DNA of 64,000 nucleotides, from assembly GCA_038087875.1 (NCBI GenBank), contig CM075978.1, positions 152,830,001-152,894,000 of the forward strand, given 5' to 3'. Below, piece by piece: positions 3,675-57,375 of this stretch (positions within the stretch are counted from its first letter, which is position 1; every line of letters begins with the position of its first letter). The stretch is from Malacoraja senta (lineage: Eukaryota). The notes below the pieces were generated by a model that had not been told where the DNA came from, made no database searches, and saw nothing but the letters and a program-made list of their open reading frames with translations. The translations under genes and the position numbers were made by a program.

Positions 3675-3774
3675 GTAGACAAAAATGCTGGAGAAACTCA
3701 GCGGGTGAGGCAGCATCTATGGAGCTAAGGAAAAGGCGACGTTTCAGGTCGAGAACCTTCTTCAGACCTGCCCG
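3675..3774 (-). mobile_element. 100-bp PLE pseudo-LTR-derived element with hammerhead core
   Basis: Minus strand reads CTGAAGAAGGTTCTCGACCTGAAACGTC. Perfect 14-bp TSD tcaaatatcatgag at 3661-3674 and 3775-3788. Confidence 0.85.
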
Positions 3775-4744
3775 TCAAATATCATGAGATTTTTTTCATT
3801 TATTCTAGATATCGCCAGCATTTATTCCCATCTCTAATTGAGAAGGTGTTGAGCCACCTTCTTGAAACACAGTAGTCCTTCTGTTGACATCGCTCCCAGA
3901 GTGATGCAAGAAAGGGAATTCCAGGATTAAGGCACACTATTGAGGAGGAAATAGTGAAATACCATAAAATTGCAATAAATCATGATCCAATGATTCAGAA
4001 ACTCCAATGATTTGGAATTTGGATCACCAGGTAATGTTTACCGTGCTTCTTTTAAACACATTGGCACCAAAACCTCATACCTTTCCCCGAATAGATTGGA
4101 AATAATAATGTGAAGCAATCTGAAATGGCAGTCAAGTGAGAGAATGTGTACATTTGCATTACATTTGACTAACATTGGCAAGGGTAGCTTGCACCAGTGT
4201 GAGACAAGGCAGATTTATCCTCCTGCCATATCCGACAGCATCCAAGGGAATAGAACATTAAATGTTTGAGATCGAAGAGACTTTTTTTCAGCATCTGCAG
4301 TTTTTTCTTAAACATTAAATTAGGAAAATCTTTTTCACCCAGAGATTTGTGAATCTGTGGAATTCTCTGCCACAGAAGGCAGTGGAAGCCAATTCACTGG
4401 ATGTTTTCAAGCGAGCGTTAGATTTATCCCTGAGGGCTAACGGAATCAAGGGATGGGGGGGGGGGGGGAAAGCTGGAACGGGGTACTGATTTTCTCCTCC
4501 TGCCATATCATTTGCAATTAAAGCAGAACATTATCGCTAACATATCACGATTCGGAGCTCAAAAAATAAATTAGTGCCTTCAACATTAGAGCAAATATAT
4601 ACAGTTTTACAAAATTAAATGGCAACAAAAAGAAAACACTCAGCCATTGAAGTAATGCAGATAAATATGAGAATGTTATAGATATGTCCACATCACACAT
4701 TTTTGGGGAAAAGAGATCATGGACAAAGGAAGAGTATTTACAAT

Positions 4745-4995
4745 ACACACAAAATGCTGGAGTAACTCAGCGGGACAGGCAGCATCTCTGGTGAGAAGGA
4801 ATGAGGACGTTTCAGGTCGACACCATTCTTCAGACTGAGAGTCAGGGGAGAGGGAGATACAGAGATAAGGAAGGGCAAGGTGTGAAAATGAGACATCAGC
4901 AGACGAAGCTCAATGAAAATGTAAAATAGATCATTGTTAGCTATGGGAAGGTGACAACACAGCATACAGAGATAACATGTAATCAGGAGGACAGT
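4745..4995 (-). mobile_element. PLE-derived 3' end fragment (subfamily B) with hammerhead-like core
   Basis: acacaaaatgctggagtaactcagcgggacaggcagcatc...gacgtttcaggtcgacaccattcttcagac. Related copies at about 2965-3050, 5537-5625, 8297-8390, 8632-8720, 10000-10120, 11320-11390, 27650-27885, 29240-29320 and 30920-31135. Confidence 0.8.
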
Positions 4996-6009
4996 CCAAC
5001 GGGTCTGTACTGAATAGTACAGGTCATCAGCAATAAAGGATGATCTTTCCTTCCAGCTCTATTAACCATTTGATGCTCACTCGTATCAAACTGATTTTGC
5101 TCAGCTGTGAAGAATAGAGAACAGTTCAGTACAGGAACAGGCCCTTCGGCCCACAATGCCATTATCATACCTGACCCCACCACCACCCCCGGCAATGCGA
5201 ACCAGGCACTCACCAGCCAGTGTGTAAAATACTTGTCCAGCACATCTCATTTAAACATTGCCCCTCTCATCGAAAGCTATGCCCTCTAGTATTTGATATT
5301 TCCATCCTGGGAAAAAGATTCTGACGGTCTACACTCCGTCTCTCACTATTTTTTACACTATCATGCCTCCCCTCACCCTCCAGCTTCCCAGAGAAAACAA
5401 TTCAAGTCTGTCCAATCTCTCTGTGTGGCCAGTAATCCCTGATCCAGGCTTCATTCTGGTGAACCTCCTCTGCGTCCATTCAATAGCCCCCATATTGAGG
5501 CAATACTCCTAACGTAGCCTGACCAATTTCCTATAAACACAAAATGTTGGAGTGACTCAGTGGGGCAGGCAGCATCTCTGGAGAGAAGGAATGGGTGACA
5601 TTTCGGGTCAAGACCCTTCTTCATGTCCGCCGACCCTCGCCTCTCCACCGGCCACCAGCGGGCCAGAGCCGTCACCTCACCAGAGTTCCAGGCTCAGCAC
5701 CAGGCCCACAACCTCCACGATGCAGGCAGCACGTGGTCCGACTCTGCTGGGTCCTATTGCTCCCCCCCCCCCCCCCACAGGGAACCTCAGTAGTAGTGAT
5801 GGGTCTTCCCTTTCCCACTCTTTCAGCCATGTTCCCCGACCATACACCCGCAAGTCTAAATTAAATTTTGGGGGGGGGGGGGGGGGTTTAAACAGAGGTG
5901 CCGGAGTGGCGCTCCAGTGTGGTCCGGCAGCACTGCATCCTTGGACATGACAATAAAACACTCTTGACTCTAGAATGCACGATGCTATCTATATGTTCAA
6001 TGGACATAC

Positions 6010-6083: not shown

Positions 6084-9000
6084 CTTCAAAAGAATAAGGA
6101 ATTTTGTAAATGTCAACAAAAAATTGCATTCATCAGAATATGCAGTCTTTAACATTGAAATTTACCAGATGTAGAACATTTAACAATGACCCAAAAAGTT
6201 AACTGGAATCAGATAATTACTCTTACTTTTAATTATTTTGGCAAGAAAGCAGAAAAAAGGTTTCACTTATTTAGTGTTGAGATACAAGCTAATGAGGAGC
6301 AAGAAGCAAACTGCTGGAGGAACTCAACAGGGCAAGCAACATCAGTGAGGGGTAGAGGCTGAAGGGCAACAATTATGTTTTGGATCAAAACCTCCACAGA
6401 TGCTGATCGAGCCACCGAGTTCCTCCAGCAGTTTGCCTTTACTCCAGATTCCCGAGTCTGAGGAAGGGTCTCGCCCCAAAACCTCGCCTATTCCTTCTCT
6501 CATTAGATGCTGCCTCACCCGCTGAGTTCCTCCAGCATTTTTGTCTACCGTCAATTTTTCCAGCATCTGCAGTTTTTTCATTAAATTAAATTAGGAAAAT
6601 CTTTTGCACCCAGAGGGTTGGGAATCTGTGGAATTCTCTGCCACAGAAGGCAGTGGAGGCCAATTCACTGGATGTTTTCAAGAGTTAGATTTATCTCTTC
6701 GGGCTAACAGAATCAAGGGATATGGGGGGGATAAGCAGGAACAGGGTACTGATTTTGGATGATCAGCCATGATCATATTGAATGGTGGTCCTGGCTCGAA
6801 TGGGCGAATGGCCTTCTCCTGCACCTATTTTTCTATGTTTCTAATTCATGTTTTGGTGCTAGAGAATCTTTTCATCTTTAAAAGAGCTCTTTGCAAATGT
6901 GCTGAGTACATATACTTTTTCTGAAATCAACATATTGTTCCAGACAATGGCACAAAGGAATGTATTTGAAGTAGCCTACATTGATACCAGCAAGAATTTA
7001 GACAAGTCTTGCAGGCAGCCAGGTCAACGTTACATGCCCATGGGAATGTGGTAATTCGTACCCAAAATTTGCTCAGCAGGTCAAAGTGAAGAGTATACGA
7101 TACGATAAGATAGAACTTTATTTATCCCAGGAAGGAAATTGATCAGCCAACAGTCATAAAACACAAGATACATGAAACATGAAATGCAAGTGATGAGTGG
7201 AAAGGATTGGGGATGTGCAAAGATAAGGGGGGGGGGGGAAGGAAAGAGTCAGTGTACCCCACGACAGAAGGGGGAGGAGTTGTACAGTTTGTTTGCCACA
7301 GGGAAGAAGGATCTCCTGTGGTGTTCTGTGCTGCATCTTGGTGGAACCAGCCTGTTGCTGAAAGTGCGCCTCAGGTTGTTCAGTTTGTCATGGAGGGGGT
7401 GAGCTGTATTGTCCAAGCATCAACTGATGGATGAGATTGTGATTTTATGGCCGTTTGCAGTGGGCTCAGATCCAGTCCCATGCATGCGCTTACACACACT
7501 AATTACTTAGATAGAAATGTGGAGGCTTGTAAGCTCACAGGCAATGTGATTGACTGGAATGAGGAAAGCTTTCAACTTCCTGATGGATACAGATTGCATC
7601 GTCATTTGGGCAGAGGAAACGTAAACATAATTGAACACAAATGCAAGGCAGTCTATCTGAGGAAGTGCAATAATGCAACAGAACATACAATAAGTAGGAG
7701 AACTTTGAGAAGCGTGGCAGAACAGAAGAAGCCTGAAGTATATGGTTATAGATTTTTATAAACGCAGTAGGACAAGTAGGTAAAGGTAGTTTACAATGCT
7801 CATGTGATGCCTTATTTTATTAGCAGAAACACAGAATGCTCCTTAGGTAATAGGCCCAGTACTGTATACAGTCCTGATCACCATTCTCCAGAAACAACAT
7901 TGAATAGTACAGCACAGAAACAGGCCCTCAGTACTCAATATCCATGCCAAACATGATGCCGTTAAACTGATCTCCTCTGCCTGCACGAGATACATATCAG
8001 ACTATTCCCTGCATATCCATGTGTCTATTGAAAAGTCCCTTAACATACACACACAAACATTCCTTATAACCTGAAGAAATGCACACAGCAGGTCAAGCAA
8101 ACTTCTCAAATCAGTTACCATAACTGCAGAACTGAGTGCATCCAACACCTTTAATGGCTTAACTCCTCACCATTGATATCCTGTGAATGACCACTGATCA
8201 GAAATGTTACTGGATTAGCCATGAAAGGTCTTGCCCTTCACCCCTCCAAAAGATTTGGCCCATACACAAGATACAAATCAAGAGAATGACAGTATGACAC
8301 AAAAAGCTGGAGCCACTCGGTGCGTCAGGCAGCATCTCTGGAGAAAAGGAATAGGTGACATTTCGGAGTGGAATCTTCTTTCAGACTGAATTATATAGAA
8401 GGCCAAAACAAAATAGGGCCAGTAACAGATGACCTCAGGAAGGGCGGAGTCCAACAATGGCCCATTGTGGCTGGGGAAGATGTTCTATTGACAGGGAAAC
8501 GAGGATACGAACAGTGGAACTAGTAGGCCGACTAGGGTAGGGTGGGTATGATGCAACATCCTCGTCACCCGAACGACTGCAGCTCCAACAACACTCAAGA
8601 AACACAACTCACATTTGAATTACACATAACTTAGACACAAAATGCTGGTGTAACTGCTGGAGCATCTCTGGCTGGAAGGAATGGGTGATATTTCAGGTCA
8701 CGACCCTTCTTCAGACTGATGACTGTTTGAATTACACATCATCTATCTCTCTGAACATTTACTTCCTCAACTATCACCATTACAACACTGAGGGTCATCC
8801 ACAGAAAATAAAAACTCATACTGTAACAACAAATCAAGATTTATTGGACAATATCATAATGGAATAGATTTAGGGCTAAATAAAACTTGATGAACTGATA
8901 TTTTTGGCAATAAATTGACTATTCGCTTGACCTTTGAATTCCTGACTGCGACATAAGAATGCAGCTATGCGACTATATAATTATGAAGCATTTCTCTCAC

Positions 9001-9096: not shown

Positions 9097-9536
9097 CTGT
9101 AATAGAACAAGCCAAGTCAGTGTTACCAAATGGTGGTATCAGGAAATTAAAGTAAGCACATCTGCTTGGTCCCACAAGATTAAAAAAAACATTTTATTCT
9201 TCATTTTGTATATTGTGCACAGTTTCTACCTCTTTTGATTATCTGTGAAAAAACAAAATCTATAATTTTTTACTTTCCAATCATTCTTTTTATGTTTTAA
9301 AAACTGAGAGTGTGATCATTCCATTCCTTTCAGAATTAATAATCACTATAAAAAAAAATCAGTAAAAGCATTGCAGATCTATTTCCGTCCTGTATTTTGG
9401 TTATTGTCTGTACTTAACAAGAGAAGACAATCTCTCCTTTTTCGATACTGAAAAGATTTATTGAAGTAAAAGTGTTAACTTCCATCTCTTATATTTGGAA
9501 ATCTGTCTTTTAGTCTACAAATCTGTCTTCCTCAGT

Positions 9537-9564
9537 CTGAAGAAGGGTCTCGACCTGAAACGTC
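9537..9564 (+). ncRNA. Minimal hammerhead ribozyme core motif (putative)
   Basis: CTGAAGA-A-GGGTC-TC-GACCT-GAAA-CGTC inside a ~100-bp PLE-derived element at 9531-9630. Confidence 0.65.
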
Positions 9565-10154
9565 ACCTATTCCTTCGCTCCATAGATGCTGCCTCACCCG
9601 CTGAGTTTCTCCAGCATTTTTGTCTACCTTTGTCTTTTAAGCAAGATTCCATAGAGAAGAGAAGGAATGGGTGACGAATCTGAAGAAGGGCCTCGACCCG
9701 AAACAGCTAAGGTTGCAGATCAAAGAAAAATGATAACTCCTTCTCTTTCCTCGGGATCTGTCCGACTGTCAGTGTTCCCAGCAGCTTCTGTTCTCATCTG
9801 AGAACAACATGGCCCTGAGTATTCGTAAAGTACACAAACTAACTATTGGCTAAGCAGTGATAAACATCCAAACATTTCTACCCCCTAACTTCATTGATAT
9901 AAACCTTTTCCAAGACGACCAACATTACAATTTGGCAGCTTCAGATCCATGCATTGCACAAGACTTAACTGTGATAACCAACAAAAGAAAGTTTTCTATA
10001 GGAAGGAACTGTAGATGGTGGTTTAAACCAATGATAGACACAGAATGCTGGAGTAACTCAGCAGGACAGGCAGCATCTCTGGAGGGAGGGTGACATTTCG
10101 GGTTGAAAACCTTCTTCATACAAATGTTTTCTTCTGAGTTGTGCTATTTACTGC

Positions 10155-11283: not shown

Positions 11284-12187
11284 CCTTGTGTAGGATAAAG
11301 ATTGATAAAAGATCTCTATCTGAAACGTCACCCAGTCCTTCTCTCCAGAGATGTTGCCTGGCCTGCTGATTTCCTCCAGCATTGTGTCTAATTTTAATTG
11401 GGTTCCACGGTTGCTGAAATGCTCAAGACCTGAAGGTCAGAGACAAGGCAGTAAATATACTCACTCACGTTTATCAATGACAACAAATGGCATTCAGCCA
11501 GTCTGTTTGTCCAAACATGACACACTGATGTTTCAATAATCCCTACAGCAAGCATTCACTTTATTTACATTTAACGGCAAGTACGGAAATTTCAATAATC
11601 ATAATGCTTCATGATCAATGATATTATTCACCAAAAGAGGAATAAAACGATACTGAGAGGTACTAGTTTCTGAGATGCCACTACTCAGTTACTCCAAATC
11701 CATTCATTGTTTCAGAGTGAGCTCGTCTGCTTACTTCATTGGCACGAACTGTTGCCCACCAAAGTGCTCAGTCAACATTGAGATGGAAGACCGGGAGAGT
11801 AAAGGTTGAATGCTATACAATTGCCAGATTGTAACTGAAGTTGTACCTCCTTTATAAGGTGGTGGAACAATTCATAGGCAAAAAAAAAAACCATGTTCAG
11901 TTCTTTAAATCATATTGCTTGGTGTTCATTTCTGAACACCAAGCAAATTCGAGCAACTTCAGGCTTGTTATTCTATACTGACAAATCAATGAATTTTATG
12001 AATAATTTGACCTTGCATGTAATATGTGGCTGCATGCTGTGCATGAATGTTAGTATGTGCTTAGTCAGTTTCTGCAGACAGTGGCTTTCCATCCATCCCG
12101 TTCCCTTGCTGGATGCCAACAATGACAAGATATTGACTGAAATTGTTAAAAAACAAAAATATTCTATGAGCAATGATATAAACTTAC

Positions 12188-17600: not shown

Positions 17601-17744
17601 TCATGCAACATCCATTGTGATGTCAAAGGCGGCAATGACCTGCATTATGAAAAACGAGTACCACCACTACCTGTATCTTTGTCCTCATAGCTTCCTGTAC
17701 AATAACTGGGGTATCCCGTGAGCTGCTACTACTGCATAAGTATT

Positions 17745-17955
17745 GAAGGTAGACAAAAATGCTGGAGAAACTCAGCGGGTGAGGCAGCATCTATGGAATG
17801 AAGGAATCGGTGACGTTTTGGGTCGAGACCCTTCTTCAGACTGATGGGGGGGGGGGCGGGAAAAAGAAAGGAAGAGGTGGAGGCAGTAGGCTGTGGGAGA
17901 GCTGGGAAGGGGAGGGAAGGAGGGAGAAAGCAAGGACTACCTGAAATTGGAGAAA
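17745..17955 (-). mobile_element. PLE 3' end fragment (subfamily A)
   Basis: Reverse complement of the 43410-43610 region. The core has GAAA changed to AAAA. Other subfamily A copies at about 6455-6580, 29580-29665 and 56785-56865. Confidence 0.82.
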
Positions 17956-18529
17956 TTGATTAGTACGGGTGCCAGGGGTTATGGGGAGAAGGCAAGCGAG
18001 TGGAGTGAGGAGGGAGAGATAGATCAGCCATGATTGAATGGCAGAGTAGACTTGATGGGCCAAATAGCCTAATTCTGCTCCTATCACTTATGAATTTAGG
18101 TCCTTTGTAATTGATTGTGTTTCCCTTTTGAGTTACATTGTAATTGCATTCTTTCAAAAGTTTGTTATTTTCTTCAAAAGTCTACACTTTGAAGTTACTA
18201 TACTTTCATCATTGTTTAATTAGCACATATCCTTCAGATCTTACTGATAATGCTGATTTACCACCCATTGAACCATCAGGAGAGTCTAACCACACATTTC
18301 AACAGCATTGCTATCACCAAGTAGCCAACCGTCAACAACCAGGACTCCCCACTGACAAGCTGCTCAACTGGACCAGCTACATAAACACTAACTGCAAAAA
18401 CAGGTCAGATTGGATGTCCAGCAACAAATCACTCACTTCCTTACCTAGCCCAATCCCCATATCTTCAAAACAAAAGGTGGGATCACGATGGAATATTCTC
18501 CATTTGCTCGATCAACACAATACCGGTTG

Positions 18530-19022
18530 CTCAACACTTTAACTCCCCCTCCCATTCCCACACTGAACCTTCAGTCCTGGGCCTCCTCCATTGTCAGAGC
18601 GAGGCCCAGTGCAAATTGGAGGAATGTTTCACTTGGGCATCTTACACCCCAGCGGTATGAACATCGACTTCTCTAACTTCAAGTAACCCTTGCTTTCCCT
18701 CTCTCTCCATCCCTCCCCCTTCCGAGTTCTCCGACCAGTCTGACCGTTCCCCCGATTACATTTTATCTGTTTGCTTTGTTCTCACTTTCTCCTCGCTAAC
18801 AATGATCTATTCTACATTTTCCTTGATCTTCATTTCTTTTGATCTCTTACACTTCCTGATCTCGGTGACTCCCTCTCCCCTGACTCTCAGTCTGAAGAAG
18901 GGTCTCAACCTGAAACAACACCCATTCCTTCTATCCAGAGTTGCTGCCTGTCCTGCTGAGTTACTCCAGTATTTTGTGTCTATCTTCAGTGTAAATCAGC
19001 ATCTGCAGTTCTTTCCAACACA
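18530..19022 (+). mobile_element. PLE 3' fragment (end of GIY-YIG plus pseudo-LTR, subfamily B)
   Basis: Similar to 43255-43420, followed by CTGAAGAAGGGTCTCAACCTGAAAC. Similar fragments at 32755-33090, 55185-55515 and 56100-56550. Confidence 0.82.
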
Positions 19023-23878: not shown

Positions 23879-26800
23879 CGGAGTTCAGCCAGAGCTGAAC
23901 ACACTTCTCGGCATCTGCATAGAATGATGTCTGTCTTGTCGCTTCTTGTGCTTCTTGGGCGGTGGAAAGATTGGTGGAAACAGGTCCGCGACAAGAACGC
24001 TCTTTCCTTGACCCCAACTGATCAGTTAGGAGTAACTCTGAAGATGTCCTGTCCTCAAATTTTTAATAGACCGAAACTGAGTTGCTGAGGAATTTGGTTC
24101 AGCAGGTAGAACGACTTATGAGTTAATATCAGTCCCTCTGACCATTGTTCCTAATGCTTTGCCTGCCTTGTTTGATGTCACTGACTGTACTGGCGGCTTT
24201 AATAGCTATGCCCAATACCCATATTACACAAGCCGTTCCATGGTGTTCGTTCACCTTGTAAATGAGTCATCGTTTCCAATATTAGTTCAGCCCCTTAATA
24301 TATTCTCAATTGCTCTGTATTTGCTTTGCTTTGTCTTTGCTGTATGCAATTTGTAAGAATTTTAAATATATTGCCTCGTGGTTTGGGGATGCATGTTCAA
24401 CAGTAATATTCTCAAGGGAGTTGGAAATATTCTCAAAGGAGAAATGCATAGAAATGGTAAAGAAGCAAGGAAATAATATTAACTAAGTTGCTCAAAGAAG
24501 AGACTGATGCAAAGGAAATTATTGCCTCTTAATTATGCGTATTTAAAAAACCACAGTGTTGTGGCTAAAACAGAATTGGGTATAGGAGGCTGTTTTTAAG
24601 ATTAATTACTGTACATTGAGAATAGAAAGATAGATAGGAAATGAATTTTGGACTGTTTATGATCAATATGAGTAGGAAGGAACTGATTTGCACAAGATAG
24701 ACACAAAAGATCTTTACCGAATATAGACACAAAAAGCTGGAGTAACTCGGCGGGTCAGACAGCATCTCTGGAGAAAAGTAATAGGTGACATTTTGGGTAG
24801 AGACCCGTCTGAAGAAGGGACTCGACTCGAAACGTCACCTATTTATTTCCTCCCGGGATGCTGCCTGACCCGCTGAGTTACCCCAGCATTTTGTGTCTAT
24901 CTATGGTAAATATGATATAGGTAACCTCCACCAGTGAAGATTGAACCTCAACCAAAGGTTTTATGGATCATGGCTGTTACTAATTACATCAGAACTGGCA
25001 TAATTCACTAGGTCTCAAAATTAAACTAGTGTGTGGAACTGGAAATCATGCTCTTCCCTCATAATAAGTTTTGTAAACAAATGTTGGAAAGATCTGGCTT
25101 CTGACTACCTGCAACCTATGGATAACATTCCTGTGAAATGGGAATATTAAACCACATGGATTCGAAAAACATCCTCACTTATTTTGTGAATTTCAGTTGC
25201 TATTTTCTATTTTTTATTAATGGGTAGTCTCAAACCTCTCCAATATAAATTCTTAGCAGCCAAGAAAGGGAAGACAATTTTGCAATTTCTAATTCCCTTC
25301 AATCATTCAGCGCAGCACTTAAGGCCATGATTTTATCAAATCATGCCTCCATTCACAATGCACATCTGAAGTGCCCAGATAAACAGTTAATTCTGTAACT
25401 TGGCAGCCTGCAACACTCCTCACTCGACTTCAGTAAATGTAATTTAGCTGCTGTAAGTAAAGTGCTGTAAAAGTTAAATTAAACATTTTTGAAATAAATA
25501 ATTGAATGTTGATAATTAGTAGCTCAAGATCCTGATGTGTACATGTCCTGCTGGTGCCCATTATGTCTTCAAGGGCAGTTTTGGACTGGAATGGAAGTGA
25601 ATACTTTATTGTCCCCCACGCCGCGTCCTCCATTGCTTAAAGAAATCTGTTATATTCTGTCATTTTCTTTTGATCTGAACTTTTGATTCTTTTGATCATT
25701 TTCTTTTGATCCCATTGTATGTTTGCCGGCTCTCAGAATCCTGCCTCCTATTTCCTTGCAATCTATTACACTGGACCTTTTGTTGGTGTTTATTATGGTG
25801 TTCACAAAGTATTACGTTTACCTGTCTGTGCTGCTGCTGCAAGTGAGAATTTCATTGTTCTGTTTCTGTTTGACAATAAAACAGTCTTGACACTTGACTC
25901 TCCTCATCTCCCCCCCCCCCCCCCCCCTCTGCCAGTCCTACAATTCTCCTGCCACCCATCTATCTGCACTTGGGGCAATTTACAGCTTCCAGTTAACCTC
26001 TCGATGTGTATTTGGGGTGTAGGAGGATGCCCAATGGTCATAGAAAGAATAGGCAAGGTCCACAACCACAGATCACCCTCGGTCAGATTTTGGCACGGGT
26101 CACTGGACCTTTTGGATACAACCATTTCTGCCACTCGCCCCATACCTTACATATAACTAGATTTAACCAATGTTTCTTCAAAACTATTTGACTCCTGAAA
26201 ATGTTCTTATTTTTAAACAGGTGTGAATTATCATTGTGTTTTTTAATTAATGCTGGTATTTTTAAGGATTTACCTTTTTTAATTGCTTTGGATTACAAAC
26301 AAGCAAATTATTTTGTCTACCCATGTTCTCCAGAGAGGCTCCCTGACCCATTTAATTACTCCAGCAATTTGTGTTGTTTTTTTGTAAACCAGCTTCTTTC
26401 TAAATTATATTTTTGATCATTTTTCCTCATTTTCCCTTCCATGTGGGCATTGAGGGTTGGGTATAAAACAAATGGTTAGATTATATATAGGTTAGGTATA
26501 AATGGTTAGGTATAAAATAAATTTGATACTTCAGATGAACTGTAAAGCAAATCCATCCTTTATAACTTCTGGTGGATATATCAATTCTGTTCCATTATTC
26601 AGAACCATTAAGGGCCAGTCCCACTTAAGCGATTTTTTTTTTAGATGACTACAGGCGACTGCCGAAAAATCGTTTTCACACCTTACCCTTCCATATCTCT
26701 CTCTCCCTTTCCCCTGACTCTGTCTGAAGAAGGATCTCAACCCAAATCGTCACCCATTTTGCACGTGCATTTTGCTCCAGAATCTCTCTATCATCCCTCT

Positions 26801-27398
26801 TGACCTCTGTGTCTTGTCAATGAGACCCATCTCTTGCTTCCCTGACCCTAATACTGTGAAATGGCTGATTACGTTTCCACTCTGGTCTCCAGATTGGCTG
26901 ATTATTTATTCTCAGCTATTGCCCCGCTCTCTTTCAAAAACAGCATCACATCAGCACATCGTTCAGAAAACACCTTGACTCCTCTACGCTTCCCAACTAA
27001 TTTACAATCTCTCAATTAGAGCCTCCCAAAGTTGTGTCCATCTTACCCAGCAAGCCTTACTTGAATTCACCACTCAAAGTGTTGTCCCTGTTATATCAAA
27101 TGAAACATCCATAACCAATGTCATTGAGGTACCTGGTGCAGATTTGACTAAGGTACCTGGATGAGACCATGGTTGTTAAGCTCTTCTTTTACCTCTCTAG
27201 TCTCGCCTACAATGGAATTGCATACAATGGCCACATTGCACCTTTTCCTCTGGTGGGTTCAGCATCATCATCGAACAATATAGACCACTGATAACATCAA
27301 CTTTATCTTCCTACTAATTTTTACCCTTCATTTCTTCGAAATTCTCAGACTGTTTGTCCAACAGTCATAGAGACACCTTGCGTAGCTTGTTTAATGTT

Positions 27399-32965: not shown

Positions 32966-32994
32966 CTGAAGAAGGGTCTCGACCCCGAAACGTC
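32966..32994 (+). ncRNA. Minimal hammerhead ribozyme core motif (putative), sense strand in SPIRE2 intron 1
   Basis: CTGAAGA-A-GGGTC-TC-GACCC-C-GAAA-CGTC inside the PLE-derived element at 32755-33090. Confidence 0.65.
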
Positions 32995-34125: not shown

Positions 34126-34164
34126 GAATAGGTTGTTGTTATAAATTATATATTGTTTAAATAT

Positions 34165-37890: not shown

Positions 37891-37906
37891 TCTATCTATC
37901 TATCTA

Positions 37907-42729: not shown

Positions 42730-43645
42730 TAGATGAGGCTCTCACCAGGGTCTCCTCTATATCCCGCAGCTCCGCTCTCACTCCCCATCCCCCCACTCGT
42801 AACAAGGGATGAGCCCCCTTGTCCTCACCTTCCACCCCACCAACCGTCACATACAACAGATAATCCTCCGACATTTACGCCACCTCCAACGGGATCCCAC
42901 CACCGGCCACATCTTCCCATCTCCTCCTCTTTCGGCTTTCCTCAGAGACCGCTCCCTCCTTAACTCCCTGGTCAATTCGTCCCTTCCCACCCAAAGCACC
43001 CCCTCCCCTGGTACTTTCACTTGCAACTGCAGGAAATGCTACAATTGTCACTTTACCTCCCCCCTCAACTCCATCCAAGGACCCAAGCAGTCTTTCCAGG
43101 TGAGGCAGAGGTTCACCTGCACCTCCTCCAACCTCATCTATTGCATCCGCTGCTCTAGCTGTCAGCTGCTCTGCATCGGCGAGTCCAAGCGCAGGCTTGG
43201 CGATCGCTTCGCCCAACATCTCTGCTCGGTTCGCATTAACCAACCTGATCTCCCGGTGGCTCAGCACTTCAACTCCCCCTCCCATTCCGAATCCGACCTT
43301 TCTGTCCTGGGCCTCCTCCATGGCCAGAGTGAGTCCCACCGTAAATTGGAGGAGCAGCACCTCCTATTTCGCTTGGGCAGTTTACACCCCAGCGGTATGA
43401 ACATTGACTTCTGCAATTTCAGGTCGTCCTTGCCTTCCCCTCCCCTACCCAGCTCTCCCACAGCCTACTGTCTCCGCCTTTTCCTTTTTTCTTTCCGCCC
43501 CCCACCCCCACATCAGTCTGAAGAAGGCTCTCGACCCGAAACGTCACCTATTCCTTCGCTCCATAGATGCTGCCTCACCCGCTGAGTTTCTCCAGCATTT
43601 TTGTCTACCTTCGATTTTCCAGCATCTGCAGTTCCTTCTTAAACA
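42730..43645 (+). mobile_element. 5'-truncated Penelope-like element with GIY-YIG endonuclease and a terminal pseudo-LTR carrying a hammerhead motif
   Basis: PLVLTFHP, CxCxxCxxC linker, FTCTSSNLIYCIRC...LCIGESKRRLGDRFAQH...PVAQHF...GMN (GIY-YIG, with YIG changed to CIG). Followed by the hammerhead core at 43518-43545. Confidence 0.9.
43518..43545 (+). ncRNA. Minimal type I hammerhead ribozyme core motif (putative)
   Basis: CTGAAGA-A-GGCTC-TC-GACCC-GAAA-CG-TC. Conserved CUGANGA and GAAA boxes, imperfect stem II, palindromic ACGT stem III, GUC cleavage triplet. Confidence 0.65.
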
Positions 43646-44299
43646 TTTTCTGCACATCGTAACTGTTTATCGTGAACTTGTCATATAAACAACTCTAAAA
43701 TAGCAATTTAACATTCTGATCCAAACCCTGTAAATAAATCTTTTTGTTTTCAGTATATATTTGGATTGAATCAACATTCATGGATTGATGGACAGTTGGA
43801 ACATTAAAACCTGTTTTCCAACAGAACACCTTCTTGCTTGCATTTCACACTTGTCAACTATTATTATTTTACTTTCAGAACTGCTTTGCAAAGTTTAATT
43901 ACTGATTAATTATAAATAATTGCACCTTACAGTCATTATATCATAAACTTTATGAAGTAGTAATTCCATTAAAAAAAATATTCTGCAGAGTTTAGTTTGC
44001 ACTGTCAAGCTTCACCAGTCTGTTATTTGACTGAGTTTGCAGCAATAGCACTAAATAACTGGGATTTATTGTTATTACTGCATGTAACTGGGGAAAACAA
44101 TTGGGATTTCCATGCACGAGTTATTGAGCTCTGGAATGCCAAAGTTACTGCCTAGGGGTGCAGCGAACAATCTCAGTATGTTTGCAGCCTCCTTCACCAG
44201 CAGAACTGAGGGAAATGACTTGAAGTAGCGTATTCTTCAAGTTTCGCATAATAATCATATTATCCAACATCATAAAAACCTTGTACATAATTCAGAGAT

Positions 44300-51213: not shown

Positions 51214-51668
51214 GGGCGGCAAGGTGGCGCAGCGGTAGAGTTGTTGCCTTCCAGCGCCAGAGACCCGGGTTCGATCCTGATTACGTGTGCTGTCTATGCA
51301 AAGTTTGTACGTTCTCCCCATGACCTGCGTGGGTTTTCTCCGAGATCTTCAGTTTCCTCCCACGCTCCAAAGACGTACAGGTTTGTAGGTTGAGGAAGGG
51401 TTTCGACCCGAAATGTTGCCTATTTCCTTCGCTCCATAGATGCTGCCTCACCCGCTGAGTTTCTCCATCATTTTTGTCTACCTCGATTTTCCAGCATCTG
51501 CAGTTCCTTCTTAAGCAGGTTTGTAAGTTAATTGGCTTGATATAAATGTAAATGTATAATTTTCCCTCGTTTGTGTAGGATAGCGTTAGTGTGTGGGGAT
51601 CGCTGGTCGGTGTGGACTCTATGGGCCAAAGTGCCTGTTTCTGCGCTGTATCTCTAAACTAAACTAAA
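51214..51668 (+). mobile_element. Full-length tRNA-derived V-SINE (HE1-like) interrupted by a PLE mini-element at 51392-51515
   Basis: A box TGGCGCAGCGG (51225), B box GGTTCGATCC (51268), V-domain-like gggttttctcc...tttcctcccac, (CTAAA)n tail. The insert is flanked by caggtttgtaggtt and caggtttgtaagtt. Confidence 0.88.
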
Positions 51669-52716: not shown

Positions 52717-53147
52717 GTCTTGTCGACGAACATTGCCAGGCTGAAGGGGAACGGTGAGCAGTGGGCCATTGAGAATCTAAAAGCAAATGATTTTATCATC
52801 TGAAATGTCGTCTCCTGCTTGGTGGCTTTTCAAATGGACTGATTTCGGGGGTTGAGAGTCAGACAGCATGCAAACAACCAGATGGCCCACCTCATCTGTG
52901 TTGATCAGAGTACTCATCTGGTTCATCCCATTTTCTAGCACTTGGCCCATAGCCTTTTAGCCTCAGCGACACTTGGTCACGTAGACTCTTAAATACTGCC
53001 AACGACTCTGCTTCCACCAGGTAAGTGCCACTTTCTGGGTGCAAAAGGTCCCCCTCCGATTCCGAATGAAGGTTATTCCCAACAGTGAAACAGTGAACAA
53101 GTGTTAGGCAATCGGAAAAATGCAAATCCAGCCCTGTTATAATGCTT

Positions 53148-53331
53148 GTTTAAGAAGGAACTGCAGATGCTGGAAAATCGAAGGTAGACAAAAATGCTGG
53201 AGAAACTCAGCGGGTGAGGCAGCATCTAAGGAGCGAAGGAAATAGGCAAAGTTTTGGGCCAAAACGTTGCCTATTTCCTTAGCTCCATAGATGCTGCCTC
53301 ACCCGCTGAGTTTCTCCAGCATTTTTGTCTA
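53148..53331. mobile_element. Fold-back PLE-derived mini-element with the same architecture as 27399-27580
   Basis: Inverted arms of about 70 bp with 3 mismatches. Direct repeat cctgttataatgctt at 53133-53147 and 53332-53346. Confidence 0.88.
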
Positions 53332-53641
53332 CCTGTTATAATGCTTATTTAGAGAATAATGTGAATGGGATGATTAAAAGGAGACTGGTTATGAATATTA
53401 ATTGTGTGGATATCATGTGCATATCATTCATGACATGCAATCATGAATATTTTTCTAGCATTGTCCTTGCATAAATATTTTCTCTTAACACCTTCAATTC
53501 AGAGTCCCATCATTCAGTAGTTGGGTTCTAAATTTAGACAAGTGCAAAGGTTGGACATTTGACTTTATTGCGAGAGGATTTGGACACAAGAGGAGAGATT
53601 CTTGTTCCAATCATACAGAGCTCGAGAAGGCCACATCGAGA

Positions 53642-54460
53642 TTTTTTATTTTTATTTGTTATTTTTAATTTATTTATTAGAAGCCGTGTACAAAAATATA
53701 ACCAGCGGCATATGACATAATACAGTTATTGTACGGCTTCAAATTTAATTTTTAGCCATAGTTAAGAGAAAAGAAGAGAGAAAAATTAAGAGAGAGAAGT
53801 GGAATGTGCAAGGATAGAACCCCTAGACTACCAAATTGGTGAAGCCAAATAGTGAGTAAGTAAAAGAAATTAGGAAGACGTCGAGAAATAAAAAGACAAA
53901 AACAGAAAGAAAAACAAAAGGTGATGATATACCTGCTTCGTATCCCTCCCCACCCATCACCCATCACCCAGCCCGTAATTAGATGTAATTCCAAAATTGT
54001 GTTGCACCATACTATCCTTGTAAGAAACCAATGAATGGTGTCCATGTCTTCGCAAAACGCTCTGGTTTTTCTGCTAAGACGAGTCTAATATTTTCAAGAT
54101 GTGGCGTCTCAGACATGTTTGTAATCCACATTTTAAGAGTAGGGACAGATGTATGTTTCCAAAATTTGAGTATAAGCTTTTTCACTGTTATCAGACCATA
54201 ATTGAGGAAAAGTCTTTGAAATATTGATAGCTCAGAGCAGGCTTCTGACGTACCTAGAATAATCTGTTCCGTGTCGGGGTCCAGTTTTGTTTTTAATGTT
54301 TTTGAGAGAATTTCAAAAATTTCTCTCCAAAAGTTATGTAATTTTATGCAAGAGGCGAAGGAATGTGTTCTAGTTGCTTCTTGAAGGAGACATTTGTCAC
54401 AAATAGGAGATACATTTGGAAAGATCTTATTCAGTTTAGACTTTGAATAGTAGAGTCTAT
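53642..54460 (-). mobile_element. L1-clade LINE 3' fragment nested in an older CR1-like fragment
   Basis: Minus strand encodes RLYYSKSKLNKIFPNVSPICDKC, similar to the C-terminus of the 12.8-kb L1. T-rich tail at the left end. TSD cacatcgaga at 53632-53641 and 54461-54470. Confidence 0.88.
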
Positions 54461-57375
54461 CACATCGAGAATCTTGTTCAAAAGTCCAAAGGAAAGATAT
54501 ACTTGAGAGAGAGGGAGTGAGTGAATGATCATTAGATTGAGTATTTGGCTGGTGAGTTGTTGCACAAGGGGAAATTAACCAGGTTAGGCCCGAATTCTGG
54601 AGACACGAGAGACTTCAGATGCTGGAATCGGAAGCAAAAGGCAAGCGGCAGCAGCAAGCCAGTGGGTTACACGGCATCTGTGCAGGCACAAGCATAGTCA
54701 ACATTTTGGGTTTGTACCCTGCATCTGGATACTGTCCAGACCCAAAATGTTGCCTCTCCTTTAGCCTCCACGTCTGCAGCCTAACCCGCTAGGCCTGTAC
54801 TCTGAGATGAGAAGAATGGAAATGATTTTCCTGAAATAGTCAACATTCTCAAGGTACTTCATAGAGTAGATGACTCGAATCATAGAGTCGATGAGCCGTT
54901 GATGTTTCCCTTGGGTGTGGTATCCAGAACCAGGGGTCACGGTGCCAAAATAAGGGGTTGTCCATTCAAGATCGATTCCATAACGATTTCTTTAGCCGGT
55001 GAACAGGCCATCTTTGAGATTCATTGTCCAACACTTGTGGAGACTCGGGTGCAGAGGAAATCCAAGACACTGATACAGCTTTTAATTATTAAAGGAATTG
55101 TGGGATAAGGTGTGTCCTTCTATTTCTGTCACTTACCAAGGTCCAATTGAGTGATAAAGCAGCATAAAGGGCAGCATGGAGGAACTGCAGCTTACAGCCC
55201 AGTGGTATGAATATTGATTTATCTCACCAGGTAACCCCGGCATTCCCTCTCTATCCCTCCCCCACCCAAGTCGCACTGGCTTCTCATTTCCACCCTACAA
55301 ACAGCTAATAATGGCCTTTCCTTTATCATCATTACTTTTTTTGCATATCTTTCATTCATTGTTCTTTATCTCTCCATATCACCGTCTATATCTCACATTT
55401 CCCTTATCCCAAACCAGTCAGAAGAAGGGTCTTGACCCGAAACGTCACCCATTCCTTCTCTCCAGAGATATTGCCTGTCCTGCTGAGTTTCTCCAGCTTT
55501 TTGTGTCTGTCTTCAGCATGAAGGGTCAGTTGGCTACTTAGTTTAGTTTAGAGATACAGCATGGGACTGGCGGCCATTCGGCCCATTCCATCCACACTGA
55601 CCATCGATCATGATGAGTGCACATTGGTTCTATGGGATCCCACTTTCCCATCCACTGCCTGCTCACTGGGGCAATTTACAGAGGCCAATTAACCAACAAT
55701 CCTACATGTCTTTAGGATGTGGGAGGAAACCAGAGCACCCGGAAGAAACTTGCGTGGTCACAGGAAGAATATGCAAACTCCACACAGACAGCTCCCGAGG
55801 TCAGGATTGAACCCGGGTCTTGGCACTGTGAGGCAGCAGCTTTACCAGCTGCACCACCCTGCTGCTACTCTTGTTTTATTTATTGTGATCATTCAAGAAA
55901 TGAAAGACATGCAATTTGCAGATGAAATATATATTTCGGTTTATTTGGCAAATAAAATCATGAAAGGCAGAAATGGGGTGAACACAACAGTCTTTACCTG
56001 AGGAAGGGGAAATGAAAACTCGCAGTGAGAAGGGAAAGATTTCAAAGGGACATGAGAGGCAACTTTTCACATAGAGGGTGGTGCTTATAAAACAAGCTGC
56101 TGGAGCACCTCATATTTTGCTTGGGCAGTTTACAACCCAGCGGTATGGATATTAATTTCTCTAACTTCAAATAACCCTTGATTTCCCTCTCTCTGCATGC
56201 CGCCCCCCCCCCCCCATCCAAGTTGTACCAAGTCATTGTACAAGCTTCAAAGTCGTCTTGTTGAGTTTCATTGTCTGTAACTCATTTTCACCTTTCCCGC
56301 AGCTCACAATGGCCTGCTACCTTTATCATCGTTCATTTTTTGCATGTCTTTCATTCATTTGTTCTGTATCTCTCTATATCACTGTCTTTTTCTCTCGTTT
56401 TCCTTTCCCCCGACTCTCAGTCTGAAGAAGCGTCTAGACCTGAATCATCACCTATTTCTTTTCTCCAGAGATGCTGCCTGACCCGCTGAGTTACTCCAGC
56501 TTTTTGTGGCTATCTTCAGTTTAAATCAGCATCTGCAGTTCCTTCCTACTCAAGCTGCAAGAGAAAGTGGTTGAGGCAGGCACTATAGCAACGTTTATAA
56601 GATACTTGGGCAGATACATGGAGAGAAAGGTTTAGACGTACAAGAGCTTGGCACAGCCAAATGAGGATGAACTTCTCTGGCTATCTTGGTCGGCATGGAC
56701 AAGTTTGATCAAAGGTCCTTTTTCTATGCTGTATCAATTTAAGAAATAAATAATTGTTGTGCTGTCTTGTAAATAAACCTCTGTCTTGACCTGAAACATC
56801 ACCTATCCCTTCGCTCCATAGATGCTGCCTCACCCGCTGAGTTTCTCCAGCATTTTTATCTACCTTCCATCTCTTTGGAGATTTATTTGAATGCATTCAG
56901 AAGAAAATAATGAATAGATTTAATCAACCTTATGATTAGCAAATGATTAAATCTTTATGATGGGATGAAAGAATGTTTTTTTTAATGATAGACAATATAA
57001 TTCTTTCATAAATAACTTTCGGTTATGCGTCACAAAGGGGTATTGCACCGTTTGTTCAGTTACATATGGATCTCTTTTGTTGCATTGATTGCTGGGGCAA
57101 AGTTTCAAGATGCTCTCGTGGAACAGCGTTGGATCCGAGAACACAGAAAGTGAAACATTGCTGTGTCATCTGGCCTTGCGTAACAATATTTGTCAGCAAA
57201 CTGCATTGGTCTAGATTTTGCAGTTAGCAGTGAAGCAACCGCCTTTCTCGCAGACTGGGAAATATTCCTCTCAAAGGTACACAGATCTTTGGGGGTGAGA
57301 ATAGTCACTGGCCTCTGCTGTCGGGTGCATGGGAACACTGACAATGACTTGTTCCTGAATGGTACAAACAAAGTC

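What the first reader, a model, noticed from the sequence alone, without database searches (positions are those of the whole stretch)
3675..56865. About 20 dispersed hammerhead-ribozyme-bearing mini-elements: a retrozyme-like family tied to a Penelope GIY-YIG element
Seen: one of the most frequent short repeats here centres on CTGAAGA-A-GGGTC-TC-GACCC-GAAA-CG-TC. The best copies are 9537-9564 (+), 24809-24836 (+), 32966-32994 (+), 43518-43545 (+) and ~3738-3765 (-). Degenerate cores lie near 4806, 5598, 6458, 8357, 8687, 9680, 10092, 17812, 18892, 26724, 27715, 29242, 30438, 31013, 51392, 55419 and 56422. The same motif ends the GIY-YIG PLE fragment at 42730-43645, and several 100-200-bp copies have their own 13-18-bp TSDs. 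Known: CUGANGA...GAAA...UH is the hammerhead core; PLE pseudo-LTRs carry minimal type I hammerheads whose loop-less palindromic stem III (here ACGU) implies dimer formation; an extra A after A9 occurs in some natural hammerheads. Inference: at about one copy per 3 kb, this is a very abundant ribozyme-containing non-autonomous family in two subfamilies that standard annotation would label as an anonymous repeat. Caveat: stem I is only about 2 bp (cagt/acc) in most copies, so activity is unproven.
Basis: partly seen in the sequence, partly recalled or inferred. Interest (0 to 1): 0.85.

Follow-up and report, generated by a model that had tools for sequence, protein, structure and literature searches.

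The report
Truncated Penelope ends carrying minimal hammerheads
The frequent short repeat is the 3' end of a Penelope-like retrotransposon, which carries the small hammerhead-ribozyme motif already known from such elements; it has been scattered as broken, mostly dead copies in what looks like a skate genome, so it is real but ordinary.

Summary
I count about 28 insertion units (33 arms), about 5.7 kb or 9% of the window. The assembly gap at 21200-21379 touches none of them.

The motif has the published hallmarks of the minimal type I hammerhead of Penelope-like elements (PLEs), described by Cervera and De la Pena in 2014. It has both core boxes, an extra base after A9, a G10.1-C11.1 pair and a loop-less ACGU helix III. 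Helix I is only 2 bp.

The "retrozyme-like mini-element family" reading is not supported.
- Copy lengths run from about 77 to 918 bp.
- Ten of 22 single units continue upstream into PLE 3'UTR or endonuclease sequence.
- Six units are head-to-head inverted pairs.
- Copies end at one of two sites 36-38 bp apart, the PLE-specific "tail".
- Eleven of 28 units have target-site duplications.
- There are no tandem arrays.

All of these are textbook PLE insertion features. Individual copies decay neutrally, mostly at CpGs, and only 5 still fit a hammerhead descriptor.

Cleavage remains untested. Rfam gives no hit, copies show no covariation, and RNA reads show no pile-up of ends at the cut site.

First-stage readers noted the same family in at least eight other windows of this genome.

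The parts
42815..43647 (+). Longest A-type PLE fragment. It holds a decayed GIY-YIG endonuclease remnant (42815-43423), a 3'UTR, a hammerhead at 43518-43545 (predicted cut after 43545), a first 3' end at about 43609, and a 36-nt tail to 43647.
   Evidence: The remnant is 61-65% identical to skate proteins whose relatives score Pfam GIY-YIG and RVT_1. The window's own ORF fails Pfam.
3675..3774 (-). A-type 100-bp copy without a tail. The hammerhead at 3738-3765 fits the descriptor. The TSD is 14 bp (3661-3674 and 3775-3788).
9529..9630 (+). A-type copy of about 100 bp without a tail. It holds the best hammerhead in the window (9537-9564), with one CpG change that turns G-C into G-U.
9650..9707 (-). 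Short B-type fragment whose 5' end is an inverted hammerhead piece (core at 9680-9707 on the + strand).
17742..17960 (-). A-type 219-bp copy that extends about 115 nt upstream of the hammerhead (17812-17839) into the PLE 3'UTR. G12 is lost to CpG decay.
6455..6585 (+). A-type copy with a decayed hammerhead at 6460-6487. Its tail-like end is fused to a LINE ORF2 3' fragment.
29540..29666 (+). A-type copy that is 5'-truncated inside helix II. It is preceded by a short (about 16 nt) inverted tail piece. The TSD is 14 bp with 2 mismatches.
56770..56870 (+). A-type copy that is 5'-truncated inside the hammerhead, so it has no CUGAAGA box.
51392..51515 (+). A2-type copy with a tail. It starts 2-3 nt inside the CUGA box. 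The TSD is 14 bp with 1 mismatch.
27393..27581 (.). A2 head-to-head inverted pair. The left arm is inverted and carries the tail; the right arm stops at the first 3' end. The joint lies in helix II/GAAA. The TSD is 14-18 bp.
53146..53334 (.). A2 head-to-head inverted pair with the same architecture as 27393-27581. The TSD is 13-20 bp. Rfam mistakes it for a generic miRNA-like hairpin.
24671..24905 (.). B2 head-to-head inverted pair. The left arm carries the tail. The hammerhead at 24809-24836 on the right arm fits the descriptor.
30328..30522 (.). B2 head-to-head inverted pair joined inside the hammerhead. The TSD is 13 bp.
35952..36142 (.). B head-to-head inverted pair joined inside helix II with about 10 nt of filler. 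The TSD is 14 bp with 1 mismatch.
18436..19015 (+). B-type PLE fragment. It holds an endonuclease remnant (18436-18680), a 3'UTR, a hammerhead at 18892-18919 and a tail. The TSD is 10-12 bp.
56104..56553 (+). B2-type 450-bp fragment with an endonuclease remnant (56103-56171), a decayed hammerhead at 56422-56449 and a tail.
55187..55516 (+). B-type fragment of about 330 bp. In its hammerhead (55419-55446) U4 is changed.
4743..5005 (-). B-type 263-bp copy, with the hammerhead at 4806-4833.
27650..27884 (-). B-type 235-bp copy. In its hammerhead (27715-27742) G8 is changed.
30920..31083 (-). B-type 164-bp copy with a tail. The hammerhead at 31013-31040 is CpG-decayed.
32942..33079 (+). B-type 138-bp copy. 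The hammerhead at 32966-32994 fits the descriptor, with one extra C in helix II.
26682..26758 (+). B-type copy cut off shortly after the hammerhead (26724-26751).
8625..8725 (-). B-type copy of about 100 bp. The hammerhead at 8687-8714 fits the relaxed descriptor. The TSD is 11 bp.
5533..5630 (-). B-type copy of about 98 bp with a decayed hammerhead at 5597-5624.
8296..8392 (-). B2-type copy of about 97 bp with a decayed hammerhead near 8357-8384.
9999..10127 (-). B-type 129-bp copy with a tail and a decayed hammerhead at 10092-10119.
29236..29323 (+). B-type copy of about 88 bp. The hammerhead at 29242-29269 has a decayed GAAA and helix III.
2965..3044 (-). Degenerate B-like fragment with a broken core box.
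11300..11398 (+). Degenerate B-like fragment with an unrecognisable core box.

Best explanation
These are dead-on-arrival insertions of the 3' end of at least two related lineages of a Penelope-like retrotransposon (reverse transcriptase plus C-terminal GIY-YIG endonuclease), in a genome whose closest annotated proteins are from skates. The lineages are A (with variant A2) and B (with variant B2).

Shown here:
- The shared unit is a 33-36-nt minimal type I hammerhead motif, then about 63 nt, then an optional 36-38-nt tail.
- It lies about 95 nt downstream of the endonuclease remnant.
- Copies end at one of two fixed 3' sites and are 5'-truncated to very different extents.
- Copies are often paired head to head, with the tail on one arm only.
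- Many copies are flanked by 10-14 bp TSDs.
- Copies decay neutrally after insertion.

Inferred from published PLE biochemistry (PMC11167929):
- The element's protein nicks both target strands with a stagger.
- Reverse transcription starts inside the RNA at either of two adjacent sites, which gives the tail-less and tailed ends.
- cDNA synthesis usually aborts early, here preferentially at or just past the hammerhead.
- When both nicks are extended, the two cDNAs meet and are joined inside the hammerhead region, giving the fold-back units.

The hammerhead is maintained in the master elements, not in the scattered copies. By analogy with other PLEs, it most likely acts as a weak ribozyme that needs a dimer or protein help, and processes multi-unit PLE transcripts.
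For: Motif and enrichment: 12 matches against 0 in shuffles. Five loci fit a minimal hammerhead descriptor, against 0.01 expected.

PLE identity: the ORF remnant at 42815-43423 hits skate proteins at E 1e-59 to 1e-72. Relatives score Pfam GIY-YIG above the cut-off, and one also scores RVT_1. Further endonuclease remnants lie upstream of the B and B2 copies.

Continuum of 5' truncation.

Tail: in-window copies end either near the position equivalent to 43609 or near 43647. In RNA reads from thousands of loci, the flanks become random exactly at 43609/10 and 43645/46. On a tail-less copy, most reads continue with the tail sequence.

Inverted pairs: all 6 have the tail on one arm only.

TSDs: 11 of 28 units, against 0.5% in controls.

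Neutral decay: non-CpG identity to the subfamily consensus is 91% inside the hammerhead and 89% downstream, and about 75% at CpG positions.

Constraint at master level: the A1, B and B2 consensuses are identical over the 36-nt hammerhead segment. They differ at 8 of 63 downstream positions and cannot be aligned upstream. The five A2 differences all keep hammerhead rules: U-A becomes U-G in helix II, a loop base changes, H17 goes C to U, 1.1 goes A to G, and 2.3 goes A to G.

Literature: minimal hammerheads in PLE terminal repeats, mostly found as single motifs from truncated PLEs, and also as opposite-strand pairs (PMC4209133). 5' truncation, an adjacent inverted copy and a 30-40 bp tail at one end (PMC8557442). 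Two internal reverse-transcription start sites, and nicking and extension of both strands (PMC11167929).
Against: - No full-length PLE and no reverse-transcriptase domain of this family lie in the window, so the pLTR or tandem context is not seen directly.
- The window's own endonuclease ORF does not reach any Pfam threshold.
- Nine of 22 single units start within 2-10 nt upstream of the CUGA box. That is more clustered than simple random truncation predicts.
- Ribozyme function is unsupported by direct evidence. Rfam hammerhead models give nothing even at E of 10 or less. Helix I is 2 bp. Copies show no covariation above shuffles. The minimum-energy fold pairs the purine-rich core with downstream pyrimidines instead. 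RNA reads show no accumulation of ends at the cut site.
Confidence: 0.8

Rival explanations
1. The 100-190-bp units are a true non-autonomous lineage (retrozyme-like or SINE-like). A short RNA starting just upstream of the hammerhead and ending at the RT start sites would be transcribed on its own and copied in trans by PLE protein.
For: Nine of 22 single units start 2-10 nt upstream of the CUGA box, and both inverted-pair right arms of B2 type start at -3. In the window, the A2 variant occurs only as short or fold-back units, and it is the commonest variant in RNA reads. In vitro, a short RNA around the RT start site is a sufficient PLE template (PMC11167929). A 2026 preprint derives animal retrozymes from PLE terminal repeats (10.64898/2026.07.22.740005).
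Against: There are no tandem arrays and no separate head or tRNA-like part. The sequence is the same as PLE 3' ends. Ten of 22 single units, and most transcribed copies, continue into PLE 3'UTR. Head-to-tail joints of about 98 nt appear in only about 1-5 reads per run, out of roughly 10,000-12,700 reads laid per run. Start points spread over about 9 nt rather than one site.
Confidence: 0.12
2. The hammerhead-like segment is conserved in master elements for another reason and does not cleave in vivo. For example, it could be part of the RNA fold bound by the PLE protein, or a palindrome that helps join cDNAs.
For: Helix I is only 2 bp and there is no covariation. There is no Rfam hit. The hammerhead fold is not the predicted minimum-energy fold. 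No read ends pile up at the cut site in three RNA runs. In Anolis, cleavage needed protein, was dispensable for insertion in vitro, and left no read ends (PMC11167929).
Against: All 11 invariant core nucleotides are kept in the consensus of A1, A2, B and B2. The extra base after A9, the G10.1-C11.1 pair and the ACGU palindrome are kept too, and the A2 changes avoid the core. Related PLE hammerheads do cleave as dimers or with protein (PMC4209133, PMC11167929). Oligo-dT and 3' single-cell libraries are poorly suited to detecting cleavage ends.
Confidence: 0.25
3. The repeats spread by segmental duplication or are a chance low-complexity motif, not by retrotransposition.
For: None beyond the simple presence of repeats.
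Against: Flanks are unrelated and each unit has its own TSD. Shuffles give 0 matches. Copies lie on both strands.
Confidence: 0.01

Closest known systems
Minimal hammerhead ribozymes of Penelope-like element terminal repeats (Cervera and De la Pena 2014, PMC4209133)
   Same: Type I order of the CUGANGA and GAAA boxes. An extra nucleotide between A9 and 10.1. A G10.1-C11.1 pair. No loop III, with a palindromic ACGU that implies a dimeric helix III. Location in the PLE terminal region. Thousands of dispersed single copies plus opposite-strand pairs. The same paper reports comparable motifs in fish Xena, Poseidon and Neptune elements.
   Different: Helix I is only 2 bp, against 4-5 bp in most metazoan examples; 2 bp was described for the D. 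virilis variant. Helix II is 4 bp with a CUCG or UUCG loop rather than 6-8 bp. I found no prior description in skates.
Canonical PLE insertion architecture: Penelope/Poseidon, Neptune (PMC8557442) and the Anolis Poseidon element PAc (PMC11167929)
   Same: Strong 5' truncation. An inverted 5'-truncated copy next to the direct one. A 30-40 bp tail at one end only (36-38 bp here). Two adjacent internal RT start sites downstream of the hammerhead. A GIY-YIG endonuclease. TSDs.
   Different: No full-length or tandem copy is present in the window. The clade (Poseidon or Neptune) was not determined. In PAc the ORF starts at helix II; here that could not be checked.
Metazoan non-LTR retrozymes (Cervera and De la Pena 2020, PMC7229834; Li et al. 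2026 preprint)
   Same: Non-coding, hammerhead-bearing, related to PLE terminal repeats, and probably dependent on PLE proteins.
   Different: Retrozymes are head-to-tail arrays of 170-400-nt units with canonical type I hammerheads, expressed as circular RNAs. Here the units are dispersed single or inverted copies with TSDs, carrying a minimal hammerhead. No arrays are present in the window, and back-joined reads are almost absent.

Membership tests
PLE minimal hammerhead (min-HHR) | CUGANGA and GAAA core boxes in type I order, with UH at the cleavage site. | tested here: met
   The consensus of A1, B and B2 has every core base. Twelve sites match within 3 mismatches against 0 in shuffles. Five loci fit the full descriptor against 0.01 expected.
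PLE minimal hammerhead (min-HHR) | An extra nucleotide between A9 and 10.1, and a G10.1-C11.1 pair. | tested here: met
   The extra A is invariant in 20 of 20 copies. Pair 10.1-11.1 is G-C in 11 copies and G-U in 5 of 20; the G-U cases arise from CpG decay.
PLE minimal hammerhead (min-HHR) | No loop III, with palindromic positions 15.1-16.1 (ACGU) for a dimeric helix III. | tested here: met
   The consensus is GAAA-CG-UC. Positions 15.2-16.2 are C-G in 10 of 20 copies, and most of the rest are CpG decay products.
PLE minimal hammerhead (min-HHR) | Helix I of about 4-5 bp. | tested here: not met
   Only 2 pairs (2.1-1.1 and 2.2-1.2) are paired in most copies. The next two are unpaired in 16-18 of 20. 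The literature allows 2 bp in the D. virilis variant (PMC4209133).
PLE minimal hammerhead (min-HHR) | Self-cleavage after H17. | tested here: inconclusive
   No excess of read ends appears at 43545/46 or 9564/65 in three RNA runs, but those libraries are oligo-dT or 3' single-cell. The energy model does not favour the fold. No bench test was possible.
Rfam hammerhead families (type I, II, III, HH9, HH10) | A score against the curated covariance models. | tested here: not met
   No hammerhead match at the gathering score or at E of 10 or less. This is expected for a motif without helix III.
Penelope-like element insertion | An ORF with a reverse transcriptase and a GIY-YIG endonuclease. | tested here: inconclusive
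   Only the endonuclease end is present. It is 61-65% identical to proteins that score Pfam GIY-YIG, and one relative also scores RVT_1. The window copy itself fails Pfam, and no RT of this family is in the window.
Penelope-like element insertion | An optional 30-40 bp tail, present at one end of the unit. | tested here: met
   Two 3' ends lie 36-38 bp apart in the window and in reads from thousands of loci. The tail is on one arm only in all 6 inverted pairs.
Penelope-like element insertion | A high degree of 5' truncation, with an adjacent inverted 5'-truncated copy. | tested here: met
   Unit lengths run from about 77 to 918 bp. Six head-to-head pairs share one TSD each.
Penelope-like element insertion | Partial tandem arrangement forming pseudo-LTRs. 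| tested here: not met
   None in the window. Only rare reads join the element end to a 3'UTR plus hammerhead (table 5c).
Non-LTR retrozyme | Head-to-tail tandem repeats, each unit carrying a hammerhead. | tested here: not met
   TRF finds no array of the unit. 'Goes back 98' joints appear in about 1-5 reads per run, out of roughly 10,000-12,700 reads laid per run.
Non-LTR retrozyme | Accumulation as small circular RNAs. | not testable with these tools
   Only poly(A)-primed libraries were offered.
SINE | A pol III-type head (tRNA, 5S or 7SL) with a LINE- or PLE-derived tail. | tested here: not met
   No tRNA-like sequence is in the window. Short units have no common sequence upstream of the hammerhead.

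The most novel reading that the evidence does not exclude
The hammerhead segment may be the preferred end and joining point of PLE cDNAs, rather than a passive passenger. Nine of 22 single units begin 2-10 nt upstream of it. All six inverted pairs are joined inside it. In every pair, the inverted arm carries the tail and the direct arm does not.

This would fit either of two readings. In the first, the RNA 5' end (promoter start) lies just upstream of the hammerhead, and reverse transcription starts at the promoter-proximal start sites. In the second, two cDNAs made from the two nicked strands anneal through the palindromic helix II/GAAAC segment; in A2 this is a natural 7+7-nt palindrome.

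Either way, the roughly 100-190-bp unit would be a self-sufficient minimal PLE template that amplifies as such.
Probability: 0.2. Interest if true: 0.5.

Novelty: new member of a known kind. Interest (0 to 1): 0.2.

Why it matters
For annotation, about 9% of this window is PLE 3'-end debris, and judging by other windows this probably holds for much of the genome. It should be labelled as Penelope-like, not as an anonymous repeat, a miRNA-like hairpin or a new ribozyme family.

For PLE biology, the copies give a clean natural record of the two internal reverse-transcription start sites (the tail) and of double-strand priming (the fold-back pairs), both so far shown only in vitro for a lizard element. 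A genome-wide census in this species could test these quantitatively.

It adds nothing new in kind to ribozyme biology.

Tried and rejected
- **Rfam.** Searches at gathering score and at E of 10 or less gave no hammerhead. The only hits were generic miRNA-like scores on a CT-rich palindrome at 39352-39437 and on the fold-back PLE pairs, for example 53204-53313.
- **Covariation.** Twenty hammerhead-bearing copies showed none above shuffles. The variation is post-insertion decay, so this test cannot confirm or deny structure.
- **Copy-level conservation of core versus flank.** There is no difference: 91% against 89% at non-CpG positions.
- **Energy folding of monomer and dimer.** The hammerhead fold is not the minimum. 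An alternative helix pairs GAAGAAGGG with downstream CCUAUUCCUUC.
- **Pfam on the window's ORF.** No GIY-YIG hit; the domain was recovered only through homologues.
- **RNA read ends at the cut site.** None were found.
- **Strand bias in 10x reads.** Reads are 3-6 times more antisense than sense, and more so over the hammerhead. I considered this as a sign of sense-strand cleavage and set it aside. The step at 43551/9570 is explained by A2-variant reads being clipped there, and orientation bias of repeats in genes is common.
- **A tRNA-like head for a SINE reading.** None found.
- **Organism names.** Run names are coded, so the many 'organisms' holding about 60% of the words of the PLE fragment could not be interpreted.

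Full report

Yes.

A self-comparison used the sequence downstream of the endonuclease remnant (43400-43700) as query. It finds 33 oriented arms of one repeat. Every coordinate in the finding is among them.

A 37-nt stretch from the body of the unit, downstream of the hammerhead, matches 22 places against 0 expected.

Grouping arms that share one pair of flanks gives about 28 insertion units. Together they cover about 5.7 kb, or 9% of the window.

The assembly gap at 21200-21379 lies between units. The nearest are at 19015 and 24671, and the gap's flanks contain no element sequence. Continuity across the gap therefore does not affect anything below. At most, unseen copies could lie in it.

**2. 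What the unit is**

The longest A-type copy runs from 42815 to 43647. Its parts are:
- an ORF remnant at 42815-43423;
- about 95 nt of pyrimidine-rich 3'UTR;
- the hammerhead-like segment at 43518-43545;
- about 63 nt ending near 43609;
- a further 36 nt ending at 43647.

The ORF remnant itself does not reach any Pfam threshold. It is, however, 61-65% identical over 89-99% of its length to predicted proteins. Those that carry a source name come from the skates Leucoraja erinacea and Rhinoraja longicauda. Several of these relatives score Pfam GIY-YIG above the curated cut-off, and one combines RVT_1 with a weak GIY-YIG match. The remnant also shows the expected pattern of a cysteine cluster followed by an LIY...IGE...R...QH motif (read by eye).

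tblastn with these proteins finds two more endonuclease remnants, at 18436-18680 and 56103-56171. Each lies upstream of a B-type hammerhead unit.

The repeat is therefore the 3' end of a Penelope-like element (PLE) with a C-terminal GIY-YIG endonuclease. No reverse-transcriptase part of this family lies in the window.

**3. Subfamilies**

The alignment and consensus building separate four groups:
- a young A1 group, 92-95% alike;
- an A2 variant;
- an older B group;
- a B2 variant.

A1, B and B2 consensuses are identical across the 36 nt from 5 nt upstream of CUGA to 3 nt past the cut site. They differ at 8 of the next 63 positions and cannot be aligned upstream, where both are merely pyrimidine-rich.

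In the window, A2 occurs only as copies truncated inside the hammerhead. RNA reads supply its full motif. It differs from A1 at five places, and all five are allowed by hammerhead rules:
- 11.4 changes A to G, so U-A becomes U-G;
- one loop II base changes, giving a UUCG loop;
- H17 changes C to U;
- 1.1 changes A to G, still pairing with U2.1;
- 2.3 changes A to G, creating a third helix I pair.

None of the invariant core bases is touched.

**4. Does it qualify as a hammerhead?**

It meets the features that Cervera and De la Pena (PMC4209133) list as emerging independently of their search descriptor:
- an extra base between A9 and 10.1, an A in 20 of 20 copies;
- a G10.1-C11.1 pair;
- a palindromic 15.2-16.2 with no loop III, so that ACGU can only form helix III between two molecules.

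It fails one usual feature. Helix I is 2 bp. The same paper reports 2 bp for the D. virilis variant.

Several other tests give no support:
- Rfam's hammerhead models give nothing, even at E of 10 or less. This is expected for a motif lacking helix III.
- A relaxed descriptor of my own is met by five loci (3738-, 8687-, 9537+, 24809+, 32966+), against 0.01 per shuffled window.
- The energy model does not favour the hammerhead fold. The purine-rich core pairs with the pyrimidine-rich stretch after the cut site.
- Across 20 copies there is no covariation above shuffles.
- Non-CpG positions are as conserved in the hammerhead (91%) as downstream (89%). The three CpGs of the motif (loop II, C11.1-G12, C15.2-G16.2) account for most losses.

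The scattered copies are therefore decaying neutrally. Whatever constraint exists acts on the master elements, as the identical consensus across subfamilies suggests.

**5. Why these are truncated PLE insertions and not a retrozyme-like family**

(a) Lengths form a continuum. Of 22 single units:
- 10 continue 24 to more than 700 nt upstream of the hammerhead into PLE 3'UTR or endonuclease sequence;
- 9 start 2-10 nt upstream;
- 3 start inside the hammerhead or at an unclear point.

(b) Copies end at one of two fixed sites 36-38 nt apart. In RNA reads from thousands of loci, the read consensus turns random exactly after 43609/10 and after 43645/46. On a tail-less copy, about 2,000 reads per run continue with the tail sequence.

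This is the PLE-specific optional 30-40 bp tail (PMC8557442). Frangieh et al. traced it to two adjacent internal reverse-transcription start sites (PMC11167929).

(c) Six units are head-to-head inverted pairs, each with a single TSD: 24671-24905, 27393-27581, 29540-29666, 30328-30522, 35952-36142 and 53146-53334. In all six, the inverted arm carries the tail and the direct arm does not.

An adjacent inverted 5'-truncated copy, and a tail at only one end, are both described as typical of PLEs (PMC8557442). Nicking and extension of both target strands was shown in vitro (PMC11167929).

(d) Eleven of 28 units have flanking direct repeats scoring 10 or more, against 0.5% of mismatched flank pairs.

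(e) The features a retrozyme or SINE would need are absent:
- TRF finds no array of the unit.
- There is no tRNA-like head.
- In reads, head-to-tail joints of about 98 nt occur in about 1-5 reads per run, out of roughly 10,000-12,700 reads laid per run.

(f) Most reads that cross the 5' side of the hammerhead continue into A-type or B-type PLE 3'UTR (loose ends before 9531-9533).

Dispersed single minimal hammerheads, and opposite-strand pairs 100-700 bp apart, were already attributed to truncated PLEs in 2014 (PMC4209133).

**6. Mechanism, with what is shown and what is inferred**

Shown here:
- two 3' ends;
- TSDs;
- 5' truncation;
- inverted pairs with asymmetric tails;
- junctions of all inverted pairs inside the 33-nt hammerhead segment;
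- neutral decay of copies.

Inferred from PLE biochemistry:
- staggered nicks on both strands;
- internal initiation at either start site;
- frequent early termination;
- joining of the two convergent cDNAs when both nicks are used.

My own inference is weaker. The helix II hairpin and its flanks are a stop or annealing point. In A2 these form a natural 7+7-nt palindrome, GUUUCGG-C-CCGAAAC, and the two A2 pairs are joined exactly there. This would explain the cluster of 5' ends.

The role of the hammerhead itself is taken from the literature and not tested here. That role would be weak processing of multi-unit transcripts, dependent on a dimer or on protein.

**7. Expression**

Three RNA runs of one coded organism, two oligo-dT and one 10x, were laid on 43350-43700. 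A second 10x run was added on 9500-9660.

Depth rises from about 10 to thousands exactly over the unit. Of the reads, 90-100% run on into unrelated sequence. The signal is therefore mostly passive transcription of many dispersed copies.

No position shows an accumulation of read starts or ends. This matches the negative result for Anolis (PMC11167929). It is weak evidence, given the library types.

The 10x reads are 3-6 times more often antisense than sense. I do not read this as cleavage (see Tried and rejected).

**8. Comparison and novelty**

The closest known things are the minimal hammerheads of PLE terminal repeats and the canonical PLE insertion architecture. This is a further example of both, in a skate-like genome.

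I found no prior description for skates. PLE hammerheads in fishes, coelacanth, amphibians and reptiles are published.

It is not a member of the retrozyme class as defined, because tandem units and circular RNAs were not met in the window or could not be tested.

First-stage readers flagged the same family in at least eight other windows of this genome. That agrees with its abundance but is not independent evidence.

**9. Verdict**

It is a new member of a known kind, and interest is low.

The points worth keeping are the natural record of tail usage and double-strand priming, and the clustering of cDNA ends and joints at the hammerhead.

Noticed in passing
window 4283-4493 and 6555-6756: A 33-nt PLE-tail-like stretch is fused at the same point to a roughly 180-bp 3' fragment of a LINE ORF2 (reading ...FTQRVVNLWNSLPQKAVEA...). 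It is 91% like 43615-47 and shares a CC-to-TT change. The two copies are 87% alike over 211 bp, including the junction. This could be a chimeric retro-copy that was itself copied, or repeated PLE insertion at one preferred site in that LINE.
   Followed up: partly
window 6300-6450: A more divergent fold-back relative of the same unit sits directly upstream of the A-type copy at 6455. Its arms resemble the GCTGAGTT.CTCCAGCA part but with CAGCAGTTTGCC. This suggests further, older PLE subfamilies that BLAST with A or B does not collect.
   Followed up: no
window 43350-43700 and 9500-9660 (RNA reads): In two 10x single-cell runs, reads carrying the unit are 3-6 times more often antisense than sense. 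The imbalance is strongest over the hammerhead. The bulk oligo-dT runs are unstranded. The cause is unknown; it could be orientation bias of insertions in genes, variant clipping, or sense-strand instability.
   Followed up: partly
window 27381-27398 with 27581-27598, and 53133-53152 with 53332-53351: At both A2 fold-back insertions, the target sequence just past the TSD resembles the element's own tail end (TGTTTAA / TATTTA). This hints at microhomology-guided priming, or at endonuclease preference for tail-like AT-rich sites.
   Followed up: no
window 24671-24760: The tail-bearing arm of the 24671-24905 pair contains an internal restart. A first 3' end plus partial tail is followed by a second copy of the last roughly 13 nt plus a full tail, as if reverse transcription had initiated twice.
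   Followed up: no
window 39344-39445 and 38200-39500: A long CT-rich/GA-rich low-complexity tract with a perfect-looking palindrome gives many sub-threshold miRNA-family scores in Rfam at the E-value threshold. These are artefacts of composition.
   Followed up: no
window 31461-31700: An ORF start reading ...[27 protein letters not shown]... looks like a host-gene exon with a KIND-domain-like N-terminus. It is followed by a 47/126/259-bp tandem array at 31763-32302.
   Followed up: no
window 12694-16416 and 44469-46598: Two LINE-type retrotransposon bodies lie here. One is an L1-like endonuclease plus RT on the + strand. The other is an RT with the FIDxSSAFNT motif on the - strand. Both are unrelated to the PLE family.
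   Followed up: no
window 57378-58722: A 14-bp satellite (GTCTGTCTCTGTGC) of about 96 copies creates long spurious ORFs in all frames.
   Followed up: no
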